Shown piece by piece: positions 1,066 to 54,060 of a stretch of DNA of 64,000 nucleotides (its first letter is position 1; every line of letters begins with the position of its first letter). Under the pieces are notes generated by a model. That model made no database searches and was not told the origin of the DNA. It was given only the letters and a program-made list of their open reading frames with translations. Where the stretch lies: positions 248,001 through 312,000 of the IMG/VR virus record IMGVR_UViG_3300024239_000013. One strand, written 5' to 3'. Both the position numbers and the translations under genes were made by a program.

Positions 1066-2472
1066 TTAGTAATTCATATTACCGAATCTTTGATCTTTGT
1101 ATTTATCATTTAGATCTTTTAATCTTTTATCAGTAACGAATCTTATCATTCTCTGGTCTTCAAGATTTTTAACTTTCATGGTCTCTTTACTAACATCTGC
1201 ATTTTCTCCAATGTTACCAGCTCTAAGAACTCCTCCTTCAATTTTACAGTTTATATTTTTTCCCTGACAGTCTATAAAGCAATCTTTAAGTTCATTCGAA
1301 TAATCAACAATAGTAGATTTAACCTTTGAAGATATAACTTTTGTCCCTGAAAAAATATAGGAATCTTCAACTGAGGATTTCTTAATTTCACAGTTGTATA
1401 TGTTACAATTTCTAATTATTGCATTTTTAATATCACAAAGGATTAAATCTATTCCTTCTATTTCAAAAGAGTTCCTAAATCTGGCTTCCTTTACCTGATA
1501 TCTTCCTGTTGTAGTATCATAATTAAAATAGCAAGATGTAATATTACCCTCTATAATAAGATCGAATATTTTATCTCTTATTGCAGGAAAGTAAGTTTTT
1601 ACATTCTCGTCCCACCCCTTTAGATCTATAAATATATGGAAGTCTGGATAATTTCTAAAGAAAAAATCTGGATTTGAAAAAGATCTTACAACTTTAGAAT
1701 ACTTATTCATCATTTTCTGAAGTTCTGCTAAATCATCTTTACTATATCCAGATATTCTATGACTAAGTATGTCGTATAAATAGAGTATAATATAATCTAT
1801 TATCTCTCTTATTTCTTTTATTTTTTTCTGATAATCTCTGTTACCTAAGTATCTAAATTCAATATAACCTTTAGGAATTTTGGTAAAATTAACTCCATAA
1901 TATTTGTCATCCGGAACTCTATACATTTTAGGATCTATTGTTTGTATATTTTCTAATATAGAAAATCTATTTCTCGGAACTACTTTTTTTATAGATTTTG
2001 CATAGACATTTTTTTCCCTATTCCCGAATCTAGAATAAATAAATCCTTCATCCAATCCTAAGATAAACTTAAGCTTGTCCAAAGTTTCTATTTTATCCTT
2101 TACGTCTCTCCTGTTTTTATCGAAGCTCACAGAAAATTGGAATGCACATCTATCCGTTGTCCATCCATTTTCGTCTATCCAATTTAAAACTTTAATTAAA
2201 ATTGGTATTGCTTCATTATAAGGAAGTGGTCCTGTTATAAACTCCATCATTTTACTTCCACCTGAATAATCGGGTTCGAGTTTAAAGTTATCTGAATCAA
2301 CAGGTACATTAGAGTGATATTTCTCAGAAACCACCACTTTCTTTTTTAAAAGTTTTGCCAATGACTCCGCAGCCTGACCTTTTAAAAGATCTGTATAGAA
2401 TTCAAATTCAAATCCTATTACTGAAGAGCCAAGGGCATTTATTTTATCAAAATGTGTTCTATTATCTGACAT
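1066..2472 (-). CDS. amidoligase-like (COOH-NH2 ligase fold) protein with C-terminal beta-helix-like repeats
   Basis: IGFEFEF, EPDYSGG, MEFITGP, YYGVNF and YIEFRYLG motifs; short I/C/S/N repeats at C-terminus. Confidence 0.6.
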   Translation of the reverse strand: MSDNRTHFDKINALGSSVIGFEFEFYTDLLKGQAAESLAKLLKKKVVVSEKYHSNVPVDSDNFKLEPDYSGGSKMMEFITGPLPYNEAIPILIKVLNWIDENGWTTDRCAFQFSVSFDKNRRDVKDKIETLDKLKFILGLDEGFIYSRFGNREKNVYAKSIKKVVPRNRFSILENIQTIDPKMYRVPDDKYYGVNFTKIPKGYIEFRYLGNRDYQKKIKEIREIIDYIILYLYDILSHRISGYSKDDLAELQKMMNKYSKVVRSFSNPDFFFRNYPDFHIFIDLKGWDENVKTYFPAIRDKIFDLIIEGNITSCYFNYDTTTGRYQVKEARFRNSFEIEGIDLILCDIKNAIIRNCNIYNCEIKKSSVEDSYIFSGTKVISSKVKSTIVDYSNELKDCFIDCQGKNINCKIEGGVLRAGNIGENADVSKETMKVKNLEDQRMIRFVTDKRLKDLNDKYKDQRFGNMNY

Positions 2473-3628
2473 CTATTAGTTCAACATATATTTTTCCTGA
2501 TATAGTGTCTACCTCATAAGGAAGAACTCTCAGGTCATCTCCAGGTTTGATATTAGCAGCTTTTTTCCCGAGTTTATCTTGAGGAACGAGAGCCATTAAA
2601 CCAAATTCAGTAAGCTCTACTAAAGCTCCATTTTTTCTTTTATGTTTAACTTTAGCATCTATAGCTTCACAGGTTCCTTCATTAACTTGTGATTCTAATT
2701 TTTGTATAATTATATTTCTTTCTAGAGGCTTATCTAAGGTTAAAGTTAATCTATTATTATCCTTTATCTCCTTAACATAAAATTCTACTTCAGATCCAGG
2801 AGAAAGAGTTGACAAAGAATCTTCTTCCGAAAATTCCGTTTTATGAATCAATCCGGTATAAACACTGTCCCATTCTACAAAAACTCCAAAATCACTGGTT
2901 CCTGTTACATATCCTTTATATTTTTTAGTAAGATCCAATTCCTGTATTTTGGAATCCATTATCTTATTAAGATATTTTTTATACGAAACGATAAAGATAT
3001 CCTTAGCTTCCACATAACCTTCAATCATAACATGAAGTTCTTTTCCGATGTATGATTCAAAATCTGTTATTTTATTAGCAGCTGCTAGTGATCCAGGTAA
3101 GAAACATTTAATTCCAGATAGTTCAGCAATATATCCTCCCTTATTAACACTGATTATTTTAACTTTATATGCACTGCTTTCCTTCTTAATTTGCTCAAAA
3201 AGTTCAGCTCTTAAAGTATGAATATAATATTCTATAACTGATCCTAAATAGTTACCGTTAGATTTTCTAACTCTAGCTTTAAGTTCAGCTCCAGGATTAA
3301 ACGAAAGATTTATAATATTAAGTCTTTCTGCGTCTCTCTTTTCCTTTTTAATATCTATATAAATAGTCTGACCTGATGCTGTCTGAGCTAATGCTTCATC
3401 CTCTTTCAGTTGTACTATTTTACAAAGATAAACAGATCCATCTACTAGATCTTTAGGTTCGAGTTCATAATCTGAAGAACCATAAGAATCAAAGTATAAT
3501 TCTGCTAATTCCTGAGCATAGGGTTCGTGACAAAAAATCTTATTACCCTTTGCTGATTTAATTTTGTTATTGACTGTTAGCCTGCTAGGTACGTCCCATT
3601 CAAAAGTGTCGAAATGATTCGAATTCAT
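2462..3628 (-). CDS. rpsA: ribosomal protein S1-like protein (about 4 S1 domains)
   Basis: KGGYIAELSGIKCFLPGS and GYVTGTSDFGVFVE..TGLIHKTE match bS1 domains 2 and 3; fourth repeat GALVEL..ALVP. Confidence 0.75.
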   Translation of the reverse strand: MNSNHFDTFEWDVPSRLTVNNKIKSAKGNKIFCHEPYAQELAELYFDSYGSSDYELEPKDLVDGSVYLCKIVQLKEDEALAQTASGQTIYIDIKKEKRDAERLNIINLSFNPGAELKARVRKSNGNYLGSVIEYYIHTLRAELFEQIKKESSAYKVKIISVNKGGYIAELSGIKCFLPGSLAAANKITDFESYIGKELHVMIEGYVEAKDIFIVSYKKYLNKIMDSKIQELDLTKKYKGYVTGTSDFGVFVEWDSVYTGLIHKTEFSEEDSLSTLSPGSEVEFYVKEIKDNNRLTLTLDKPLERNIIIQKLESQVNEGTCEAIDAKVKHKRKNGALVELTEFGLMALVPQDKLGKKAANIKPGDDLRVLPYEVDTISGKIYVELIDVR

Positions 3629-3663
3629 ATTTTTTTTAGTTTAAAGTGATTAAAAGTATCTTT

Positions 3664-3692
3664 ATTATACTATATATCATACATTGAGTTCC
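3664..3692 (-). promoter_or_regulatory. middle-type promoter GGAAC-N18-TATAAT with nested late motif (S1 operon)
   Basis: Exact 18-nt spacer; GATATATA at 3671-3678 lies inside the spacer. Confidence 0.65.
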
Positions 3693-5151: not shown

Positions 5152-5853
5152 TTATTTAGTTTTAGATACATTACTAAGATGTTCATTTTCTACCATTTTC
5201 TGTATAGGGATACCAGAAGGACCGACACCAGTTGGGTGAGTATGTGAATTAAAAAGTTTCATAAACTTATCACCTAGAATTATTTTTTCCATGGCTTTTT
5301 CACCAAGTTCTATATTTTCTGATTTAATTATAACCTTTTGCTTCCCACCATTTTTCTCCATTCTAATCTCGTCATCATTCATCTTAAGTTTAATTCTAAG
5401 TTTCTCTTTATCCTTTCCTGCATTTTGTGTATCTATCTGAATTGTTGCGTCGCCTAATTGGAATAATAATCCATTTTTTCTGGTGTATCCTATTTTTAAA
5501 ATCCCAGGTTCCGCCTCAGAATCATACACTAGGGCATGAGTTCCTTCATAAGAATTTTCTTGTTTCAGTTCATCCAAGAGTGCCTTGTCAAATTCCTTTA
5601 TGAAGTGATAAGACAATTTATAATAATTATTATGTTCGAAGTGAACTGCAACTATAGTACCTAAACGTGGTATAGATATGTTACCCCCTCCGTAATCCCC
5701 ACCAAAAGACATACCAGCAATTTGCTCAGCCCAAGGTAAATCTTCTACTGGAATACCATCAAAAAATCCAAAAACATCAATTTTAGCTCTCCCCTGATAA
5801 AGAGGATCTTTTATATCAACTATTCTACCTAGATATGTTTTTTCACTTGGCAT
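5152..5853 (-). CDS. baseplate spike, gp5 N-terminal OB-fold/gpV-like
   Basis: GRIVDIKDPLYQGRAKI..DLPWA, IPRLGTIVAVHF, C-terminal HTHPTGVGPSG apex motif; no lysozyme domain. Confidence 0.75.
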   Translation of the reverse strand: MPSEKTYLGRIVDIKDPLYQGRAKIDVFGFFDGIPVEDLPWAEQIAGMSFGGDYGGGNISIPRLGTIVAVHFEHNNYYKLSYHFIKEFDKALLDELKQENSYEGTHALVYDSEAEPGILKIGYTRKNGLLFQLGDATIQIDTQNAGKDKEKLRIKLKMNDDEIRMEKNGGKQKVIIKSENIELGEKAMEKIILGDKFMKLFNSHTHPTGVGPSGIPIQKMVENEHLSNVSKTK

Positions 5854-9763: not shown

Positions 9764-10354
9764 TTATACGGGTTTATTGAATCCCCCTCCACCTGCGCTA
9801 GGAGCAAATATTAAGAATCCATCTTTCTTTTCTATCGATTTATCGTTAGGTTGAGCTACATTAGGTGCCAATATCATAGAAGGCTGGTTCTTAATTTTGG
9901 ATTCTAAGAATTTTTTTCTACCTTCACTAACTTTGAATTTTTTCTGCTCCTGATTTTCTCTGAAAACCTGGTTCGGATTAGTATTAGTGTTTGATGATGA
10001 TGTTCTTTGGTTCTCATTTTTTTTAGACATAAAGCTTTCTTCCACAGTAGAAGAAGTTGGAATTAATAATACATTTCCCTCCATTAAAGAGAAAGGATTG
10101 CTGATATTATTCATTTTAAGAAGTGATCCTACTGAAGAATGGTCACCTAACTTTATAGCAGCTATTAAATCAGGCCTCATTTGATAGTATTCAGTAACAA
10201 GAAATACACTATCTACAGAAACTTTTACTGCATTATAAGTAATAGATGATTTAGTCAAGTCCCAAATACCATAGTTTCCACTAGATTCTAATGTTTTGTC
10301 AGGATTGAATATGTTCTTATTCCTATATAAGGTATCTATTTTAAAATATCCCAT
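9764..10354 (-). CDS. baseplate wedge gp53/LysM-like protein
   Basis: MRPDLIA...LLKMNNISNPFSLMEGNVLLIP motif. Confidence 0.6.
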   Translation of the reverse strand: MGYFKIDTLYRNKNIFNPDKTLESSGNYGIWDLTKSSITYNAVKVSVDSVFLVTEYYQMRPDLIAAIKLGDHSSVGSLLKMNNISNPFSLMEGNVLLIPTSSTVEESFMSKKNENQRTSSSNTNTNPNQVFRENQEQKKFKVSEGRKKFLESKIKNQPSMILAPNVAQPNDKSIEKKDGFLIFAPSAGGGGFNKPV

Positions 10355-17546: not shown

Positions 17547-18953
17547 TTAGGCTATAGCTAAAAATAATTCAACAGCCTTTTGTCTATAAGTTAATTTATC
17601 CTTTTTTATTTCTGGATTTTTGAGAGCCTCTTTTTTTCTATTTATTATTGATTCTGGTAACATAGGACCAAAAGTATCTTTTAATATCTTTTTGTCCTTT
17701 CTCCATTCTAGAGGAAGATGCATTGCAAATCTAACAATTTCTAAATTTAAAAACGGATTTCTTAATTCCAATGTATGAGCCATTGACATCTTATCAAGTC
17801 TTGGTAAATGATAGAAAGTAAGTTCTTCAAAAATATCAGATTTTTGTGAATCGTATTCATGAATTCTTGAATACCCTCCAAATAACTCATCTGCTCCATC
17901 TCCACTTAATACTATTCTATAATCAGTATTATTACGAATTGATTCGAATAAATGATATTGGGGTATAACAGATCCCAAATCTATCGGGCTTTCGTTCCAT
18001 TGTGCATATATAAGACCATTTTTTGCAGGATCCATATCATAGCTAAGGAAATTTACAGGAGTGTCTAAATGAGCTCTTAAATCGTTTATAAAGGGAGTTT
18101 CCCCATTTTCTATACTAAACCAAGTAACCTTTGCATCTAACTCTTTTAAAATAGCAGCAATTATAGAAGAATCCAATCCTCCGGAAACTAAAAGGGATAT
18201 CGGATAATTTCTAGATACCAATCTATTCTTAACACTTTCAAACATCTTATCCCAAAGCCAATCGACGTATGAGTCATAATCAGCACCTTCCAATTCAGGA
18301 ATTGGAAGATCCCATAATCTATAATAGTCCTTGTAGGTTTGTTCAAATCCGGGTGATTGCATATTATGATAATAAATTGTATTAGGAAGAACTCTTTTTA
18401 TATTTTTATATGCTGTTCTCGTATCCGTATTATATCCCCATTTTCTAACTGAGCTTATAAAAATTTCATCTATATCAGAAAAATTAGTATAAAGTCCTTT
18501 TATCTCAGAGCAGATTTCTCCCAATTCATTTTTATATAAAGATTTCTTTCCAAGAGGATCTGTAAAATATATAACGTCTCCGTTTTTTGAATTGTAGACC
18601 ACAATAGACCAAAAACCATCCCATTTTACAATGTGAGGAACATACATAGCAACAAAAAATTCTAAATTACCTCCTTTATAATTTTTAAAAAGATCACATA
18701 GGTATTCAGTATCAGATTCAAATATATTCGAATCATAATTAAAAATTTCACCATTAAACATCAGATAAATACCGTCGTTTATTTCTATTGGTTGGTTCCA
18801 ATTATCACCGTCTAAAGTTTGTATAGGTAATCTATGATGACATAGCGTTATGTCACCAAATGACTCTGTTGATCTTTCTATTCCCCTGTGTTTAATAGAG
18901 TCTAATATTCTATCATCAGAATTTCCTCTTGTAGTAAGTAATATTCCACACAT
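17547..18953 (-). CDS. asnB: asparagine synthetase B-like glutamine amidotransferase
   Basis: MCGI, HHRL, FNGEIFN, SGGLDSS, SGDGADELFGGY, ELRNPFL. Confidence 0.85.
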   Translation of the reverse strand: MCGILLTTRGNSDDRILDSIKHRGIERSTESFGDITLCHHRLPIQTLDGDNWNQPIEINDGIYLMFNGEIFNYDSNIFESDTEYLCDLFKNYKGGNLEFFVAMYVPHIVKWDGFWSIVVYNSKNGDVIYFTDPLGKKSLYKNELGEICSEIKGLYTNFSDIDEIFISSVRKWGYNTDTRTAYKNIKRVLPNTIYYHNMQSPGFEQTYKDYYRLWDLPIPELEGADYDSYVDWLWDKMFESVKNRLVSRNYPISLLVSGGLDSSIIAAILKELDAKVTWFSIENGETPFINDLRAHLDTPVNFLSYDMDPAKNGLIYAQWNESPIDLGSVIPQYHLFESIRNNTDYRIVLSGDGADELFGGYSRIHEYDSQKSDIFEELTFYHLPRLDKMSMAHTLELRNPFLNLEIVRFAMHLPLEWRKDKKILKDTFGPMLPESIINRKKEALKNPEIKKDKLTYRQKAVELFLAIA

Positions 18954-39389: not shown

Positions 39390-40721
39390 TTAAAATTTAT
39401 TAGAAAAGTCATCTGAAGTTGTCTTGTCGGATCTTATCTCTATAAATCTTGGTAAAAATAAAGATCTGTTTCCGTGTTTATCCTCTATAGTTACGTTATA
39501 TTGGACAGCAGCAATTTTTCCAATATGAGAATCTGGATCTTCACTTAGTGTTTTTAAATCATTGTCAGTAAATCCGGCTCCGACTTTAACATTAAGAGTC
39601 CCACTTGAATCTGTTAAGATAAATCCACCAATAAATCCTTCTCTCTTTCCCTCTCCTGGATACCATCCAGTTATAAGAAGATCGCAATCATTAACCTCTT
39701 TAAATTTTATCCAAGACTTAGATCTTTTACATTCATAAACAACATCAGCTTTACAAATAACTCCCTCCCCACCTTCATCGACAATCTTTTTATAAATAGA
39801 CGAAACTTCACTGGCATCTTTAAGCTCCCACATTTTAGCTAATTTAACCGGGGATTCTTCTGAAATCGAGGATAAAACTTTTTCTAACGTATCTCTTCTT
39901 ATTTTGTAATTAATAACTCCAGAGCCAGTATCTAGAGTAGATGCTTCCTCCAGATCAAAAATATTAAAAAGAAGTCCCTTTTCTATAGATGAATCAACTT
40001 TACCCTTAAGTATCTGAGTAACCTTGCCACTGACTGATTTTCTATTCAAATCCGTTAATTCGCCATCGAAAAACCAATCACCCTTCAATCCGCTATTTAT
40101 CATACACGTTTTAAGATCGAAAGTTATTTTAGGAAAACAAGAGGAATCAAGTTCATTAAATGCTCTAGTAAAGTAGGAAAATTCACCATTCTTATAAAGT
40201 GCTATTACTCTCACTCCATCATATTTCTCCTCACAATATACTTTTCCCCATTTTTCTATGTTATCGTGATCATCTGTTGCCAGCATAAGAGAAGGATCGG
40301 GGATTAATTCTCTCTTAAGTGCTTTATTGATAAGTTTTGCACCTATACCTATGTTCATTCTTTTGGTTAATATTTTCATAAGTACAGTTCTGAGTTCCAA
40401 ATCCTCAGCATCATCTTCAGATATTCTCTGTGAGATGATATTTTGAGCTCTACCTCTAAGTATATCGTTTGCTGCAGGGGCTTTTTTAAGCTCTTCTACA
40501 AGGGCTTTAAATTCATCCCAATGATTAGGATTACTTTCACTTAAAGATTCGTTAAAAGATATCTTATGAAGTTTTGTGGTAATAAATGGGTTATAACAGA
40601 CGTCTAGAATATAAGAGAATTTGTCTGTTAAGTTTTCTTCGATTAATTTTTGTTTTGCCTTTTGAGATCCCTCTCCTGTAAGATTTTCTAGATTTTTAAA
40701 AATTCTTAATTCTTGTATCAT
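39390..40721 (-). CDS. ATP-dependent DNA ligase
   Basis: EKYDGVR, FDGEL, EGVICK, KRSKSWIKFK, SLFLPRF. Confidence 0.92.
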   Translation of the reverse strand: MIQELRIFKNLENLTGEGSQKAKQKLIEENLTDKFSYILDVCYNPFITTKLHKISFNESLSESNPNHWDEFKALVEELKKAPAANDILRGRAQNIISQRISEDDAEDLELRTVLMKILTKRMNIGIGAKLINKALKRELIPDPSLMLATDDHDNIEKWGKVYCEEKYDGVRVIALYKNGEFSYFTRAFNELDSSCFPKITFDLKTCMINSGLKGDWFFDGELTDLNRKSVSGKVTQILKGKVDSSIEKGLLFNIFDLEEASTLDTGSGVINYKIRRDTLEKVLSSISEESPVKLAKMWELKDASEVSSIYKKIVDEGGEGVICKADVVYECKRSKSWIKFKEVNDCDLLITGWYPGEGKREGFIGGFILTDSSGTLNVKVGAGFTDNDLKTLSEDPDSHIGKIAAVQYNVTIEDKHGNRSLFLPRFIEIRSDKTTSDDFSNKF

Positions 40722-46163: not shown

Positions 46164-46523
46164 TTAAATATTATATGAATTATCATCACCAGTGATATAG
46201 CTAAATGGTATAGTTTTAGGATTTTTAGGGGGATGTAATTTTTTCCATCCCTTAGCAAATCCATTTTTAGCAATCTGTGTAAAATAAGCAAATGGATTAT
46301 TAGACTTTTCAGGATTGAATCGATTCCAATATTTACAGAGATCTTCCATAGCAAAGGCCATACAATCTTCTTTATCTTCTGGATCTTTATATGACATTTT
46401 CTTAGCTATACCGTTTATCATTAAGGTAAACATTTCTATAGTTTCCGGTGTCAGCTTACCGGCTTTCTTTGATTCTATTACAGCAAGCATAAGCTCACTA
46501 TTTTTAACATATTCTTTTGCCAT
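46164..46523 (-). CDS. gp55: late-transcription sigma factor, T4 gp55-like (short)
   Basis: YVKNSEL, FNPEKSNNPFAYFTQIAKN; start reassigned to ATG 46523 because the longer ORF crosses a terminator and promoter. Confidence 0.8.
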   Translation of the reverse strand: MAKEYVKNSELMLAVIESKKAGKLTPETIEMFTLMINGIAKKMSYKDPEDKEDCMAFAMEDLCKYWNRFNPEKSNNPFAYFTQIAKNGFAKGWKKLHPPKNPKTIPFSYITGDDNSYNI

Positions 46524-46549
46524 TAATTGTTTAATTAGTTTGGATTTAT

Positions 46550-46578
46550 ATTCTAGTATAAAAAATGGTAAATATTTC
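46550..46578 (-). promoter_or_regulatory. middle-type promoter GAAAT-N18-TAGAAT (late sigma gene)
   Basis: Between terminator and ATG 46523. Confidence 0.65.
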
Positions 46579-46580
46579 AT

Positions 46581-46617
46581 AAAAAAAGAATGTAGCTTTT
46601 TGGTTACATTCTTTTTT
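46581..46617 (-). terminator. intrinsic terminator
   Basis: aaaaaagaatgta ... tacattctttttt inverted repeat. Confidence 0.75.
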
Positions 46618-46775
46618 ATTTTTATTCCTTTCTTCTCCGGTTTCGTCTGCATCCGAATCGTCTTTTATTTCTTTTCCATCTGGTGCCTTACTTAATTTTC
46701 CTTCCGAAGATTGAACGAAGGGTTCACCCGGTTTATTTTGATCTTCCGATTTTGGAGCAAAATAAAAGTTACGAC

Positions 46776-53432: not shown

Positions 53433-53461
53433 TTTATATCATCGTAAATCTTTATTGTTTC
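53433..53461 (-). promoter_or_regulatory. middle-type promoter GAAAC-N18-TATAAA
   Basis: -35 lies in the last codons of the ECF sigma gene. Confidence 0.6.
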
Positions 53462-54060
53462 TCGTCTATTTTTTTTCTGATTTTACTGCGAGCTCTTCTG
53501 ATCCTTGTAGCGATGGATCTTTTCTTTATCCCATATTTTTCTGCAATGTCCTTATATTTCATATTGTTTATCTCTCGGTCGATCATAATGTCTCTGTATA
53601 ACTCTGGGAGATCTCTAATCTCATCCAGAACGGATTCATAAAACTCATCAAAAGTAGATTCCTCCTTATAGAATGCATACAAAGGATCCTCTTCTAAAAC
53701 ATACTGTCCTCCTATCTCATTGGATTCGTTTTTTGAAGAAAGATATTCGAGTTCAGCATCAGTGTGATTGTGATATCTTTTTCTGGACTTCATTAAGAGG
53801 AGAGATTCATTTCTTGCTATATTATAACACCAAGTTGAAAAATTTCCTCTTTCATTGTTATACTGGTCTATTTTTATCCAAATTTTAGACATGGTATTAA
53901 TGAAAGCATCTTCAGCAAGTTCCTGTTCTTTTACAATCAAAAAACAATGGTTTAGTATACCAGGTCGGAGTCTCTCGAATAAAATTTTAAAATTCTTATC
54001 ATTTTTCACAGTTATGAAATCCTCAGCTATCTTTTGGATATTCTTTTCTTTTTGTTGCAT
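53452..54060 (-). CDS. ECF-type (sigma-70 group 4) sigma factor
   Basis: Region 2 AED...FSTWCYNIARN; region 4 LPELYR..MKYKDIAE..SIATRIRRAR. Confidence 0.85.
   Translation of the reverse strand: MQQKEKNIQKIAEDFITVKNDKNFKILFERLRPGILNHCFLIVKEQELAEDAFINTMSKIWIKIDQYNNERGNFSTWCYNIARNESLLLMKSRKRYHNHTDAELEYLSSKNESNEIGGQYVLEEDPLYAFYKEESTFDEFYESVLDEIRDLPELYRDIMIDREINNMKYKDIAEKYGIKKRSIATRIRRARSKIRKKIDEKQ

What the first reader, a model, noticed from the sequence alone, without database searches (positions are those of the whole stretch)
2462..3692. Phage ribosomal protein S1 homolog under nested middle and late promoters
A four-domain bS1-like protein with a divergent N-terminus. Phage leaders here are A-rich and lack SD sites, the kind of mRNA thought to depend on bS1. 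A late motif nested in the middle promoter spacer implies sustained expression. S1 homologs are reported in huge phages but their function is untested. Inference: it reprograms ribosomes toward phage mRNA.
Basis: partly seen in the sequence, partly recalled or inferred. Interest (0 to 1): 0.6.

Follow-up and report, generated by a model that had tools for sequence, protein, structure and literature searches.

The report
Jumbo-phage four-domain ribosomal protein S1
A 319-kb phage of a probably Bacteroidia host encodes a shortened copy of ribosomal protein S1 that keeps the part which anchors S1 to the ribosome, so it most likely sits on host ribosomes during phage protein production; such phage S1 genes were already reported, and their function remains untested.

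Summary
Window 2462..3628 (minus strand) encodes a 388-aa protein with four S1/OB domains. These are collinear with domains 1-4 of bacterial bS1, behind a 60-residue N-terminus. That N-terminus is a modified Bacteroidia-type bS1 anchor: an FxW motif, an 11-residue insertion, then a helix with the [F/Y]-A-Q motif that in E. coli docks on bS2. A complex prediction with Flavobacterium bS2 passed (0.69 against 0.00 for the best control), using the known bS2 surfaces.

The gene belongs to a large, strongly conserved family (dN/dS 0.05-0.18) of 250-434-kb phages. It always lies between baseplate genes and an amidoligase-like gene. Distant relatives occur in Lak and other huge phages.

Leaders are A-rich (peaks at -14 to -11 and at -3) and depleted of Shine-Dalgarno motifs. 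Host mRNAs of Bacteroidia look the same, so selectivity for phage mRNA does not follow.

The GATATATA motif is invariant in 53 orthologous upstream regions and precedes structural genes. It sits inside a GGAACT-N16-TATAAT element shared with three non-structural genes. The temporal labels for these elements are untested.

Verdict: a new member of a known kind (phage bS1, Al-Shayeb 2020). Ribosome docking is plausible; reprogramming is unproven.

The parts
2462..3628 (-). CDS of the phage S1 homolog (388 aa, P0001), stop codon included
   Evidence: ORF list and translation; Pfam S1; NCBIfam rpsA models about 81-83 bits, far below their cut-offs; dN/dS 0.05-0.18 against eight orthologs
3449..3628 (-). 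N-terminal anchor region, residues 1-60: FxW motif (F9, W11), beta-hairpin 21-33, helix 37-49 with invariant Y37-A38
   Evidence: AF2 model; family alignment; profile-profile alignment to the Bacteroidia bS1 N-termini, P 0.0015 for this region alone; predicted contacts with bS2
3236..3439 (-). S1 domain 1 (residues 64-131), equivalent to the ribosome-binding d1 of bS1
   Evidence: AF2; hhalign collinear with Bacteroidia bS1; Foldseek 9guq_B (d1-d2) TM 0.73
2981..3172 (-). S1 domain 2 (residues 153-216), the most conserved part (mean column identity 0.87)
   Evidence: phmmer alignment to E. coli bS1 residues 115-225; per-region conservation
2735..2923 (-). S1 domain 3 (residues 236-298), canonical RNA-binding S1 domain and best Pfam match
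   Evidence: Pfam best stretch 236-294
2465..2665 (-). S1 domain 4 (residues 322-388)
   Evidence: AF2; weak Pfam OB_cyt-4 hit at 326-385; hhalign aligns it to bS1 d4
3629..3663 (-). A-rich, SD-less, unstructured 5' leader with a run of eight A before the ATG
   Evidence: Sequence; fold z-score -0.16; no Rfam family; conserved in orthologs
3670..3678 (-). GATATATAG: the phage 'late-type' promoter motif, starting 50 nt before the ATG
   Evidence: 19-fold intergenic enrichment; 42 genes carry it upstream, including head protease, portal and tail sheath and a tail-fibre-like gene; invariant in all 53 orthologous upstream regions
3664..3692 (-). Bipartite element GGAACT(C)-N16-TATAAT that encloses the GATATATA motif; the GGAACT box resembles the -35 of ECF-type sigma promoters
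   Evidence: GGAACT box and a TAnnAT-like -10 at fixed spacing are conserved in orthologs down to about 62% protein identity. Only three other sense intergenic sites exist, 49-60 nt before a DNA polymerase B fragment, a DUF2828/DUF7788 gene and a Thg1-like gene. The phage encodes three sigma-70-family proteins
1066..2472 (-). Amidoligase_2-like gene (468 aa); its start overlaps the S1 stop by 11 nt, and it is the constant downstream partner of S1
   Evidence: Pfam PF12224 E 6e-4, below cut-off; Atlas clusters named Amidoligase_2, score 0.96; same order in all 63 IMG/VR loci, and a homolog lies near S1 in LR756500
3712..12226 (-). Upstream baseplate/tail block: hub/lysozyme-like 5152..5853, wedge/sheath-like 9764..10354, and conserved unknown genes
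   Evidence: PHROGs hits; conserved synteny

Best explanation
The gene encodes a phage version of ribosomal protein bS1, cut down to the N-terminal ribosome anchor plus OB domains 1-4.

Inferred mechanism:
1. During the middle and late phases it is made from a GGAACT-type promoter and a GATATATA-type promoter, together with virion genes.
2. Its N-terminal strand and helix (residues 28-49) and domain 1 dock on host bS2, at the site normally used by the exchangeable host bS1.
3. Domains 3-4 then hold the unstructured, A-rich region of SD-less mRNAs, around -11 to -15, at the mRNA entry to the platform. This keeps initiation going, or boosts it, when phage structural messages dominate.

Shown: homology, domain order, conservation, gene context and motif conservation.
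Inferred: ribosome binding, timing of expression, and any benefit to translation.
Preference for phage over host mRNA is possible but not indicated by the sequence.
For: Homology and collinearity:
- NCBIfam rpsA models align over residues 55-363.
- Residues 161-268 align to E. coli bS1 115-225, that is d2-d3.
- The best Foldseek hits are ribosome-bound E. coli bS1: 9gut_B E 4e-23, and the d1-d2 chain 9guq_B at TM 0.73.
- hhalign against 29 Bacteroidia bS1 sequences gives probability 97.6-99.3, collinear from residue 5 to 380.

Anchor:
- Bacteroidia bS1 proteins carry F[DN]W followed by a helix.
- The phage has F9-x-W11 and the helix P-Y37-A-Q-E-L41, against E. coli S-F5-A-Q-L-F9. F5 and F9 are essential for binding bS2 (PMC4288201).
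- Y37 and A38 are invariant in 35 family members.

Docking prediction with RS2_FLAJ1:
- ipSAE 0.69 against 0.00 for the best of three controls. That mark was reached by 58 of 80 solved complexes and 2 of 110 mismatched pairs.
- The three runs agree in at least 92% of contacts; partner pLDDT is at least 73.
- The interface uses bS2 residues 32-45 and 204-210. These correspond to the beta-strand-2 and zinc-pocket surfaces of the E. coli complex.

Sufficiency of a short S1:
- Domains 1-3 of E. coli S1 retain 30S binding, mRNA binding and RNA melting.
- Deleting d5-6 has little effect (PMC3858243).
- Domain 4 is placed near mRNA -12 to -15 (PMC6847099), which is where the phage leaders peak in A.

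Selection and spread:
- dN/dS is 0.05-0.18.
- More than 120 clusters at 55-99% identity were found.
- 63 syntenic loci were recovered.

Timing:
- The GATATATA motif is shared with head protease, portal and sheath genes.
- It is invariant upstream of S1 in the orthologs.
Against: - No experiment or transcript data exist. The only runs holding the sequence are wastewater libraries that are probably DNA.
- The N-terminus alone is not significant by HMMER and only modestly so by hhalign (P 0.0015).
- The docking pass may reflect the model's memory of solved bS1-bS2 complexes. The bS2 used is from Flavobacterium, not the unknown host.
- Interface residues are only marginally more conserved than the rest of residues 1-135 (0.69 against 0.60, permutation p 0.055).
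- Scores against curated rpsA models are far below cut-off (81 against 577 bits).
- Host and phage leaders share the same A-rich signature, so no basis for selectivity is visible.
Confidence: 0.55

Rival explanations
1. Selective reprogramming. The phage S1 displaces host bS1 and changes mRNA preference, so that phage leaders are initiated in preference to host leaders.
For: - The anchor carries an extra 11-residue insertion. It forms a hairpin whose second strand (residues 28-33) gives the best-defined predicted contacts with bS2. This could raise affinity over host bS1.
- Domains d2-d3 are strongly conserved yet diverged from the host's.
- The idea is proposed for huge phages in PMC7162821.
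Against: - Phage leaders have the same A-rich features (-12/-13 and -3) described for host mRNAs in F. johnsoniae (PMC6847099).
- No phage-specific leader motif was found.
- The S1 leader itself is unstructured and ordinary.
Confidence: 0.2
2. Off-ribosome RNA-binding protein. It acts as a free RNA chaperone, a protector of phage mRNA, or a cofactor of a nuclease or polymerase. Host S1 plays such roles with T4 RegB and Q-beta replicase.
For: - S1 domains are ubiquitous in RNA metabolism: PNPase, RNase R and GSP13 models also match d3 weakly.
- Al-Shayeb et al. leave open a role 'on or off the ribosome'.
- The phage carries other RNA-handling genes: RNA ligase and a Thg1-like gene.
Against: - Collinearity with d1-d4, including the non-RNA-binding d1-d2, and the conserved anchor motif and helix are not needed by a free RNA binder.
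- The docking prediction passed.
Confidence: 0.17
3. Dominant-negative shut-off factor. It occupies the bS2 site only to evict host bS1 and block host translation, as the E. coli S1 N-terminal fragment or peptide does for canonical mRNAs.
For: - The free S1 N-terminal segment competes with S1 and interferes with translation of a canonical mRNA (PMC4288201).
- The anchor is conserved in the phage protein.
Against: - The most conserved parts are d2-d3 (0.82-0.88 column identity), not the anchor (0.49-0.67). A blocker would not need four intact OB domains.
- The phage's own mRNAs have leaders and would be blocked too.
Confidence: 0.06
4. Virion-associated or assembly-related protein. It is packaged or used during tail or baseplate assembly, given its fixed place inside the baseplate/adaptor gene block.
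For: - Constant synteny between hub/wedge-like genes and an adaptor-like gene.
- A late-type promoter.
Against: - There is no structural-protein homology.
- The fold and sequence are those of bS1.
- bS21 in other Bacteroidota phages also sits among structural genes without being structural (PMC9723584).
Confidence: 0.04

Closest known systems
Bacterial ribosomal protein bS1 (rpsA), especially the Bacteroidia form
   Same: - Tandem S1/OB domains in the same order, d1-d4.
- The FLPGS-type d2 motif.
- An N-terminal FxW motif and a helix with [F/Y]-A-Q.
- A predicted docking surface on bS2.
   Different: - Four domains instead of six (388 against about 590-620 aa).
- An 11-residue insertion in the anchor.
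- About 21% identity to Bacteroidia bS1.
- It fails every curated rpsA cut-off.
- It sits on a very long branch outside the Bacteroidia clade.
Phage 'rpS1' proteins of huge phages (Al-Shayeb et al. 2020, PMC7162821), including Lak megaphages and LR745206/LR756500/LR756502
   Same: - Encoded by phages over 200 kb whose genomes lack SD sites.
- 30-34% identity.
- One clade in the tree.
- Lak-A2 shares the N-terminal W-containing motif and the SYAQEL helix.
- LR756500 also keeps the amidoligase neighbour.
   Different: - A different, much more populous family of about 386 aa in 250-434-kb phages.
- The Lak version has three OB domains and an acidic tail.
Phage-encoded bS21 of Bacteroidota lake phages (Chen et al. 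2022, PMC9723584)
   Same: - A ribosomal initiation protein encoded among structural genes of large Bacteroidota phages.
- Proposed to substitute into host ribosomes late in infection.
   Different: - A different protein and a different site on the 30S subunit.
- This genome has no bS21 gene.
Four-domain S1 of Firmicutes (NCBIfam PRK06676) and chloroplast S1
   Same: Similar length and domain number; the alignment covers residues 62-353 against positions 17-311 of the 391-position model; the chloroplast S1 also matches.
   Different: The score of 82.7 bits is far below the cut-off of 368. The anchor motifs point to Bacteroidia rather than Firmicutes.

Membership tests
bS1 / rpsA ribosomal protein | Several tandem S1 (OB-fold) domains | tested here: met
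   Four OB domains in the AF2 model; Pfam S1 E 6.8e-16
bS1 / rpsA ribosomal protein | Domain-by-domain collinearity with bS1 (d1, d2, d3, d4), not just a generic S1 domain | tested here: met
   hhalign probability 97.6-99.3, residues 5-380 collinear; phmmer d2-d3 match to E. coli bS1; Foldseek top hits are bS1 chains
bS1 / rpsA ribosomal protein | N-terminal segment with an aromatic helix that anchors the protein to bS2 | tested here: inconclusive
   The Y37-A-Q-E-L41 helix and FxW motif align with the Bacteroidia N-termini (hhalign P 0.0015), but HMMER on this region alone is not significant. The docking prediction passed, 0.69 against 0.00 for the best control, but it is only a model
bS1 / rpsA ribosomal protein | Score above the curated equivalog cut-offs (TIGR00717, PRK06299, PRK06676) | tested here: not met
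   81-83 bits against cut-offs of 368-918 bits
bS1 / rpsA ribosomal protein | Six domains, as in Gram-negative and Bacteroidia bS1 | tested here: not met
   Four domains, 388 aa; Bacteroidia open frames are about 590-760 aa
bS1 / rpsA ribosomal protein | Physical, reversible association with the 30S subunit | not testable with these tools
   Needs co-sedimentation or cryo-EM
Phage-encoded S1 of huge phages (Al-Shayeb 2020) | An S1-repeat protein encoded by a phage genome over 200 kb that lacks SD sites | tested here: met
   319,334-bp virus record; SD motifs depleted; homologs in Lak and LR7565xx phages
Late-promoter regulon of this phage (GATATATA class) | Motif in sense orientation a few tens of nt before the ATG, shared with virion genes, conserved in orthologs | tested here: met
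   Motif starts 50 nt before the ATG against a usual 24-39 nt; virion genes carry it; invariant in 53 orthologous regions. The transcription start itself was not tested

The most novel reading that the evidence does not exclude
The phage runs a small ribosome-remodelling programme, not just a spare part.
- A four-domain S1 has a reinforced anchor: an extra hairpin that adds a strand against bS2. This lets it outcompete the exchangeable host bS1.
- A translationally coupled amidoligase, conserved next to S1 across the family and in one distant huge phage, modifies S1 or 30S platform proteins.
- A RimK-like bS6 glutamate ligase elsewhere in the genome does the same kind of job.

Together these would change how the SD-blind Bacteroidia ribosome picks start sites late in infection.
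Probability: 0.1. Interest if true: 0.8.

Novelty: new member of a known kind. Interest (0 to 1): 0.45.

Why it matters
How Bacteroidia ribosomes start translation without Shine-Dalgarno pairing is still open. The favoured idea is that bS1 reads the A-rich motif near -12/-13, and it has not been tested directly (PMC6847099).

A naturally minimised, strongly conserved phage bS1 offers a compact reagent for that test. It keeps the anchor and stops exactly after domain 4, the domain placed next to that motif. It is also a clear candidate for studying viral takeover of initiation.

Phage S1 genes, and their link to SD-less genomes, were already described. This case refines the picture rather than changing it. 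What it adds:
- the anchor is recognisable;
- docking on bS2 is predicted;
- the gene is under two conserved promoter-like elements;
- it has a constant amidoligase partner.

Tried and rejected
- PHROGs gave no family for the S1 protein.
- Megablast of 8 kb against INPHARED phages found nothing.
- Expression could not be tested. The runs that hold the locus are wastewater 'RNA-Seq' libraries kept as contigs and flagged as probably DNA.
- The N-terminal region alone found nothing in PDB sequences. It was not significant by HMMER against Bacteroidota bS1 sequences plus decoys.
- The PDB entry 'Ribosomal protein S1 homologue' (9TVU) is the Chlamydomonas chlororibosome, not a phage protein.
- There is no bS21 gene, no tRNA or tmRNA gene and no RNAP beta subunit in the genome.
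- The Saprospirales MAG that holds a related phage contig lacks a detectable bS2. The Swiss-Prot Flavobacterium johnsoniae bS2 was used instead.
- The tree cannot date or source the acquisition. All phage S1 proteins sit on a branch of length 10, with long-branch warnings.
- An autoregulatory structured leader was considered and rejected: fold z-score -0.16 and no Rfam hit.
- GGAACT as a general intergenic motif was rejected: 13 of 180 copies are intergenic, about as expected. Only the bipartite, sense-oriented sites stand out.
- An alternative genetic code was considered because Lak phages recode TAG. Table 11 gives 91% coding density, so no other code was used.
- The large representative-protein search was not run, because the protein was not left open.
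- The search for homologous proteins sees only proteins of 213-679 aa for this query.
Full report
WHAT IS THERE

The window is bases 248,001-312,000 of a 319,334-bp IMG/VR virus record. The record has 31% G+C, about 419 ORFs and 91% coding density under table 11, with 88% of genes on the minus strand. It has no tRNA or tmRNA gene.

The finding's coordinates cover a minus-strand ORF, 2462..3628 (388 aa, P0001), plus 64 nt of upstream DNA. Pfam finds S1 domains (E 6.8e-16, two significant stretches). PHROGs finds nothing.

An AlphaFold2 model built on a 35-member family alignment has mean pLDDT 76.8. It shows four OB/S1 domains at residues 66-130, 154-215, 237-297 and 323-387. Before them lie a beta-hairpin (21-33) and a helix (37-49).

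IS IT bS1 OR JUST AN S1-DOMAIN PROTEIN?

Four results say it is bS1-like:
- NCBIfam rpsA models align over residues 55-363 at about 81-83 bits. That is far below their curated cut-offs of 368-918 bits.
- Against PDB sequences the best hit is E. coli bS1. Phage residues 161-268 align to bS1 115-225, that is d2 and d3.
- Foldseek's best matches are ribosome-bound E. coli bS1 chains. 9gut_B scores E 4e-23, and the d1-d2 chain 9guq_B has TM 0.73.
- I took bS1 genes from 31 Bacteroidia genomes and 24 other Bacteroidota genomes. A profile-profile comparison of the phage family with the Bacteroidia set is collinear from phage residue 5 to 380, with probability 97.6-99.3.

The protein therefore corresponds to the N-terminus plus domains 1-4 of bS1. 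Domains 5-6 are missing.

THE 'DIVERGENT' N-TERMINUS

Nearly all Bacteroidia bS1 proteins start with an F-[DN]-W motif, followed about ten residues later by a helix. Most other Bacteroidota classes lack the FxW motif.

The phage family has F9-x-W11, with W11 invariant. An 11-residue insertion follows and forms the hairpin. Then comes the helix P-Y37-A-Q-E-L41-A-E-L-Y45, with Y37 and A38 invariant.

E. coli bS1 begins S-F5-A-Q-L-F9. F5 and F9 stack on F32 of bS2 and are essential for ribosome binding (PMC4288201).

The statistical support is modest:
- The N-terminal regions alone give hhalign P 0.0015 in the same register.
- HMMER on this region alone is not significant.

The Lak-A2 homolog has the same W-containing motif and an S-Y-A-Q-E-L helix.

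DOCKING TEST

I asked for one complex: Flavobacterium johnsoniae bS2 (RS2_FLAJ1) with phage residues 1-135.
- The score was 0.69 against 0.00 for the best of three controls.
- That mark was reached by 58 of 80 solved complexes and 2 of 110 mismatched pairs.
- The runs agree in at least 92% of contacts, and partner pLDDT is at least 73.
- The interface uses phage residues 28-33 (a strand), 37-49 (the helix) and 72-90 (d1).
- On bS2 it uses residues 7-45 and 204-210. These correspond to the strand-2 and zinc-pocket surfaces of the solved E. coli complex.

The tool warns that a pass for a family with a solved complex shows likeness, not binding. Interface residues are only marginally more conserved than their surroundings (p 0.055).

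FAMILY AND CONTEXT

The word-based protein search returned more than 120 clusters at 55-99% identity. Nearly all are 384-397 aa, on contigs up to 434 kb. IMG/VR gave 63 loci.

dN/dS against eight orthologs is 0.05-0.18. The d2-linker-d3 stretch is the most conserved part (0.82-0.88 column identity).

Gene order is fixed in every locus: baseplate-like genes, then S1, then a 468-aa gene, then a 258-aa gene. The 468-aa gene overlaps the S1 stop by 11 nt and belongs to Amidoligase_2-like viral clusters.

Distant homologs (30-34% identity) occur in the Lak megaphages and in huge phages LR745206, LR756500 and LR756502. LR756500 also keeps the amidoligase nearby.

In a tree, all phage S1 proteins form one group outside the Bacteroidia clade. 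The group sits on a branch of length 10, so its origin cannot be read from the tree.

BFVD already holds three S1 proteins of 373-385 aa from uncultured viruses or phages; two are named '30S ribosomal protein S1' and one 'S1 motif domain-containing protein'.

Leads to the host:
- The Bacteroidia-type leader and promoter signals.
- A related 64-kb contig binned into a Saprospirales MAG.
- Near-identical sequence in wastewater runs.

LEADERS

Over 283 ATG genes, A peaks at -14..-11 (0.62-0.67) and at -3 (0.66). SD motifs are rarer than in coding background.

This is the signature that Baez et al. reported for Flavobacterium johnsoniae's own mRNAs. In that paper, bS1 domain 4 is placed next to mRNA positions -12 to -15 (PMC6847099). 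Two consequences follow:
- A phage S1 that ends after domain 4 still reaches that region.
- Phage and host messages look alike, so selectivity does not follow from leader composition.

PROMOTERS

Three classes emerge.

1. A Bacteroidia-type class: a T-run plus ATC, followed by TAnnTTTG. It is dense in the 10-36-kb region of small genes, and also precedes DNA ligase, RNA ligase, DnaJ and UvdE genes.

2. GATATATA[A/G]:
- It is 19-fold enriched between genes and usually lies 24-39 nt before the ATG.
- It precedes head protease, portal, tail sheath and tail-fibre-like genes.
- Upstream of S1 it starts 50 nt before the ATG.
- It is invariant in all 53 orthologous regions examined, down to 55% protein identity.

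3. GGAACT(Y)-N15/16-TA(T/G)AA(A/T)TA:
- There are only four sense intergenic sites, 49-64 nt before the ATG.
- They precede S1, a DNA polymerase B fragment, a DUF2828/DUF7788 gene and a Thg1-like gene.
- The S1 copy (3692..3664) encloses the GATATATA motif.
- Its GGAACT box, and a TAnnAT at fixed spacing, are conserved in orthologs down to about 62% identity.

The phage has three sigma-70-family genes, one with the region-2 plus region-4_2 make-up typical of ECF-type sigmas. It has no RNAP beta subunit gene. Several promoter classes read by host core polymerase are therefore plausible.

The nested arrangement is real. The names 'middle' and 'late', and 'sustained expression', remain inferences.

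The leader is unstructured and matches no Rfam family.

INTERPRETATION

The best-supported reading is a ribosome-bound substitute or supplement for host bS1 during the phase of mass virion protein synthesis (confidence about 0.55).

E. coli work shows that domains 1-3 carry the 30S binding, mRNA binding and RNA melting activities. It also shows that loss of d5-6 matters little (PMC3858243). The phage protein therefore has what it needs.

Rivals are listed with their tests: selective reprogramming, a free RNA-binding role, a dominant-negative blocker, and a virion-related role.

NOVELTY

Phage S1 genes, and their association with SD-less huge-phage genomes, were published in 2020 (PMC7162821). 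Another phage bS1 was described in 2026 (PMC13157829).

This is a new member of a known kind. It adds a recognisable Bacteroidia-type anchor with an insertion, a passing docking prediction, a dual conserved promoter-like region, and a constant amidoligase neighbour.

Noticed in passing
G000:C1:171110-172570 (locus L141/L149), outside the window: A RimK-family ATP-grasp protein (PF08443 E 3e-35; PHROG 'ribosomal protein S6 glutaminyl transferase') lies behind a GATATATA motif. It is a second gene that may touch the 30S platform: bS6 helps sequester the anti-SD in Bacteroidia.
   Followed up: partly
window 1066..2472 (-): An Amidoligase_2-like gene has a start that overlaps the S1 stop by 11 nt. 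The S1-amidoligase pair is kept in all 63 related IMG/VR loci, and a homolog lies near S1 in the distant huge phage LR756500. Its substrate is unknown.
   Followed up: partly
window 46164..46652 (-), window 53452..54060 (-), and L146:1327-2244 (+) (genome about 6.6-7.5 kb): Three sigma-70-family genes (162, 202 and 305 aa) and no RNAP beta subunit gene. The phage probably redirects host core polymerase with its own sigma factors.
   Followed up: partly
genome 10.8-32.5 kb (outside the window), e.g. 10886, 11420, 17997, 19104, 20630: Thirteen copies of a roughly 45-nt cassette (T-run + ATC[C/T]GG ... CTTACATTTAC) lie in front of small genes. It is a Bacteroidia-type promoter (-33/-7 like), repeated almost verbatim in what looks like the early region.
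   Followed up: partly
whole genome G000: No tRNA or tmRNA gene was found in a 319-kb phage, and no bS21, unlike many huge phages with translation genes.
   Followed up: yes
genome 191231-192637 (L150), 168669-170090 (L151), 71756-72598 (L152): These genes share the GGAACTY-N15/16-TATA-like element with S1. They are a 468-aa piece of a family B DNA polymerase (exonuclease domain plus the start of the polymerase domain, possibly a split gene), a DUF2828/DUF7788 protein, and a Thg1-like tRNA-His guanylyltransferase.
   Followed up: partly
L071 (CALAZP010000190.1, 64-kb contig) and L070: Related phage contigs are binned inside bacterial MAGs, one labelled Saprospirales. This is a weak host lead that fits the wastewater occurrence of near-identical sequence.
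   Followed up: partly
window 3630: Wastewater contigs about 97-98% identical to the window have one base fewer in the A-run just before the S1 start codon.
   Followed up: no
window 17547..18953 (-), 39390..40721 (-); genome 178566-179603, 180198-181112, 89534-90631, 144798-145883: Auxiliary genes: asparagine synthase-like amidotransferase, ATP-dependent DNA ligase, a full DnaJ, UV endonuclease UvdE, T4-type RNA ligase and an M42 aminopeptidase.
   Followed up: no
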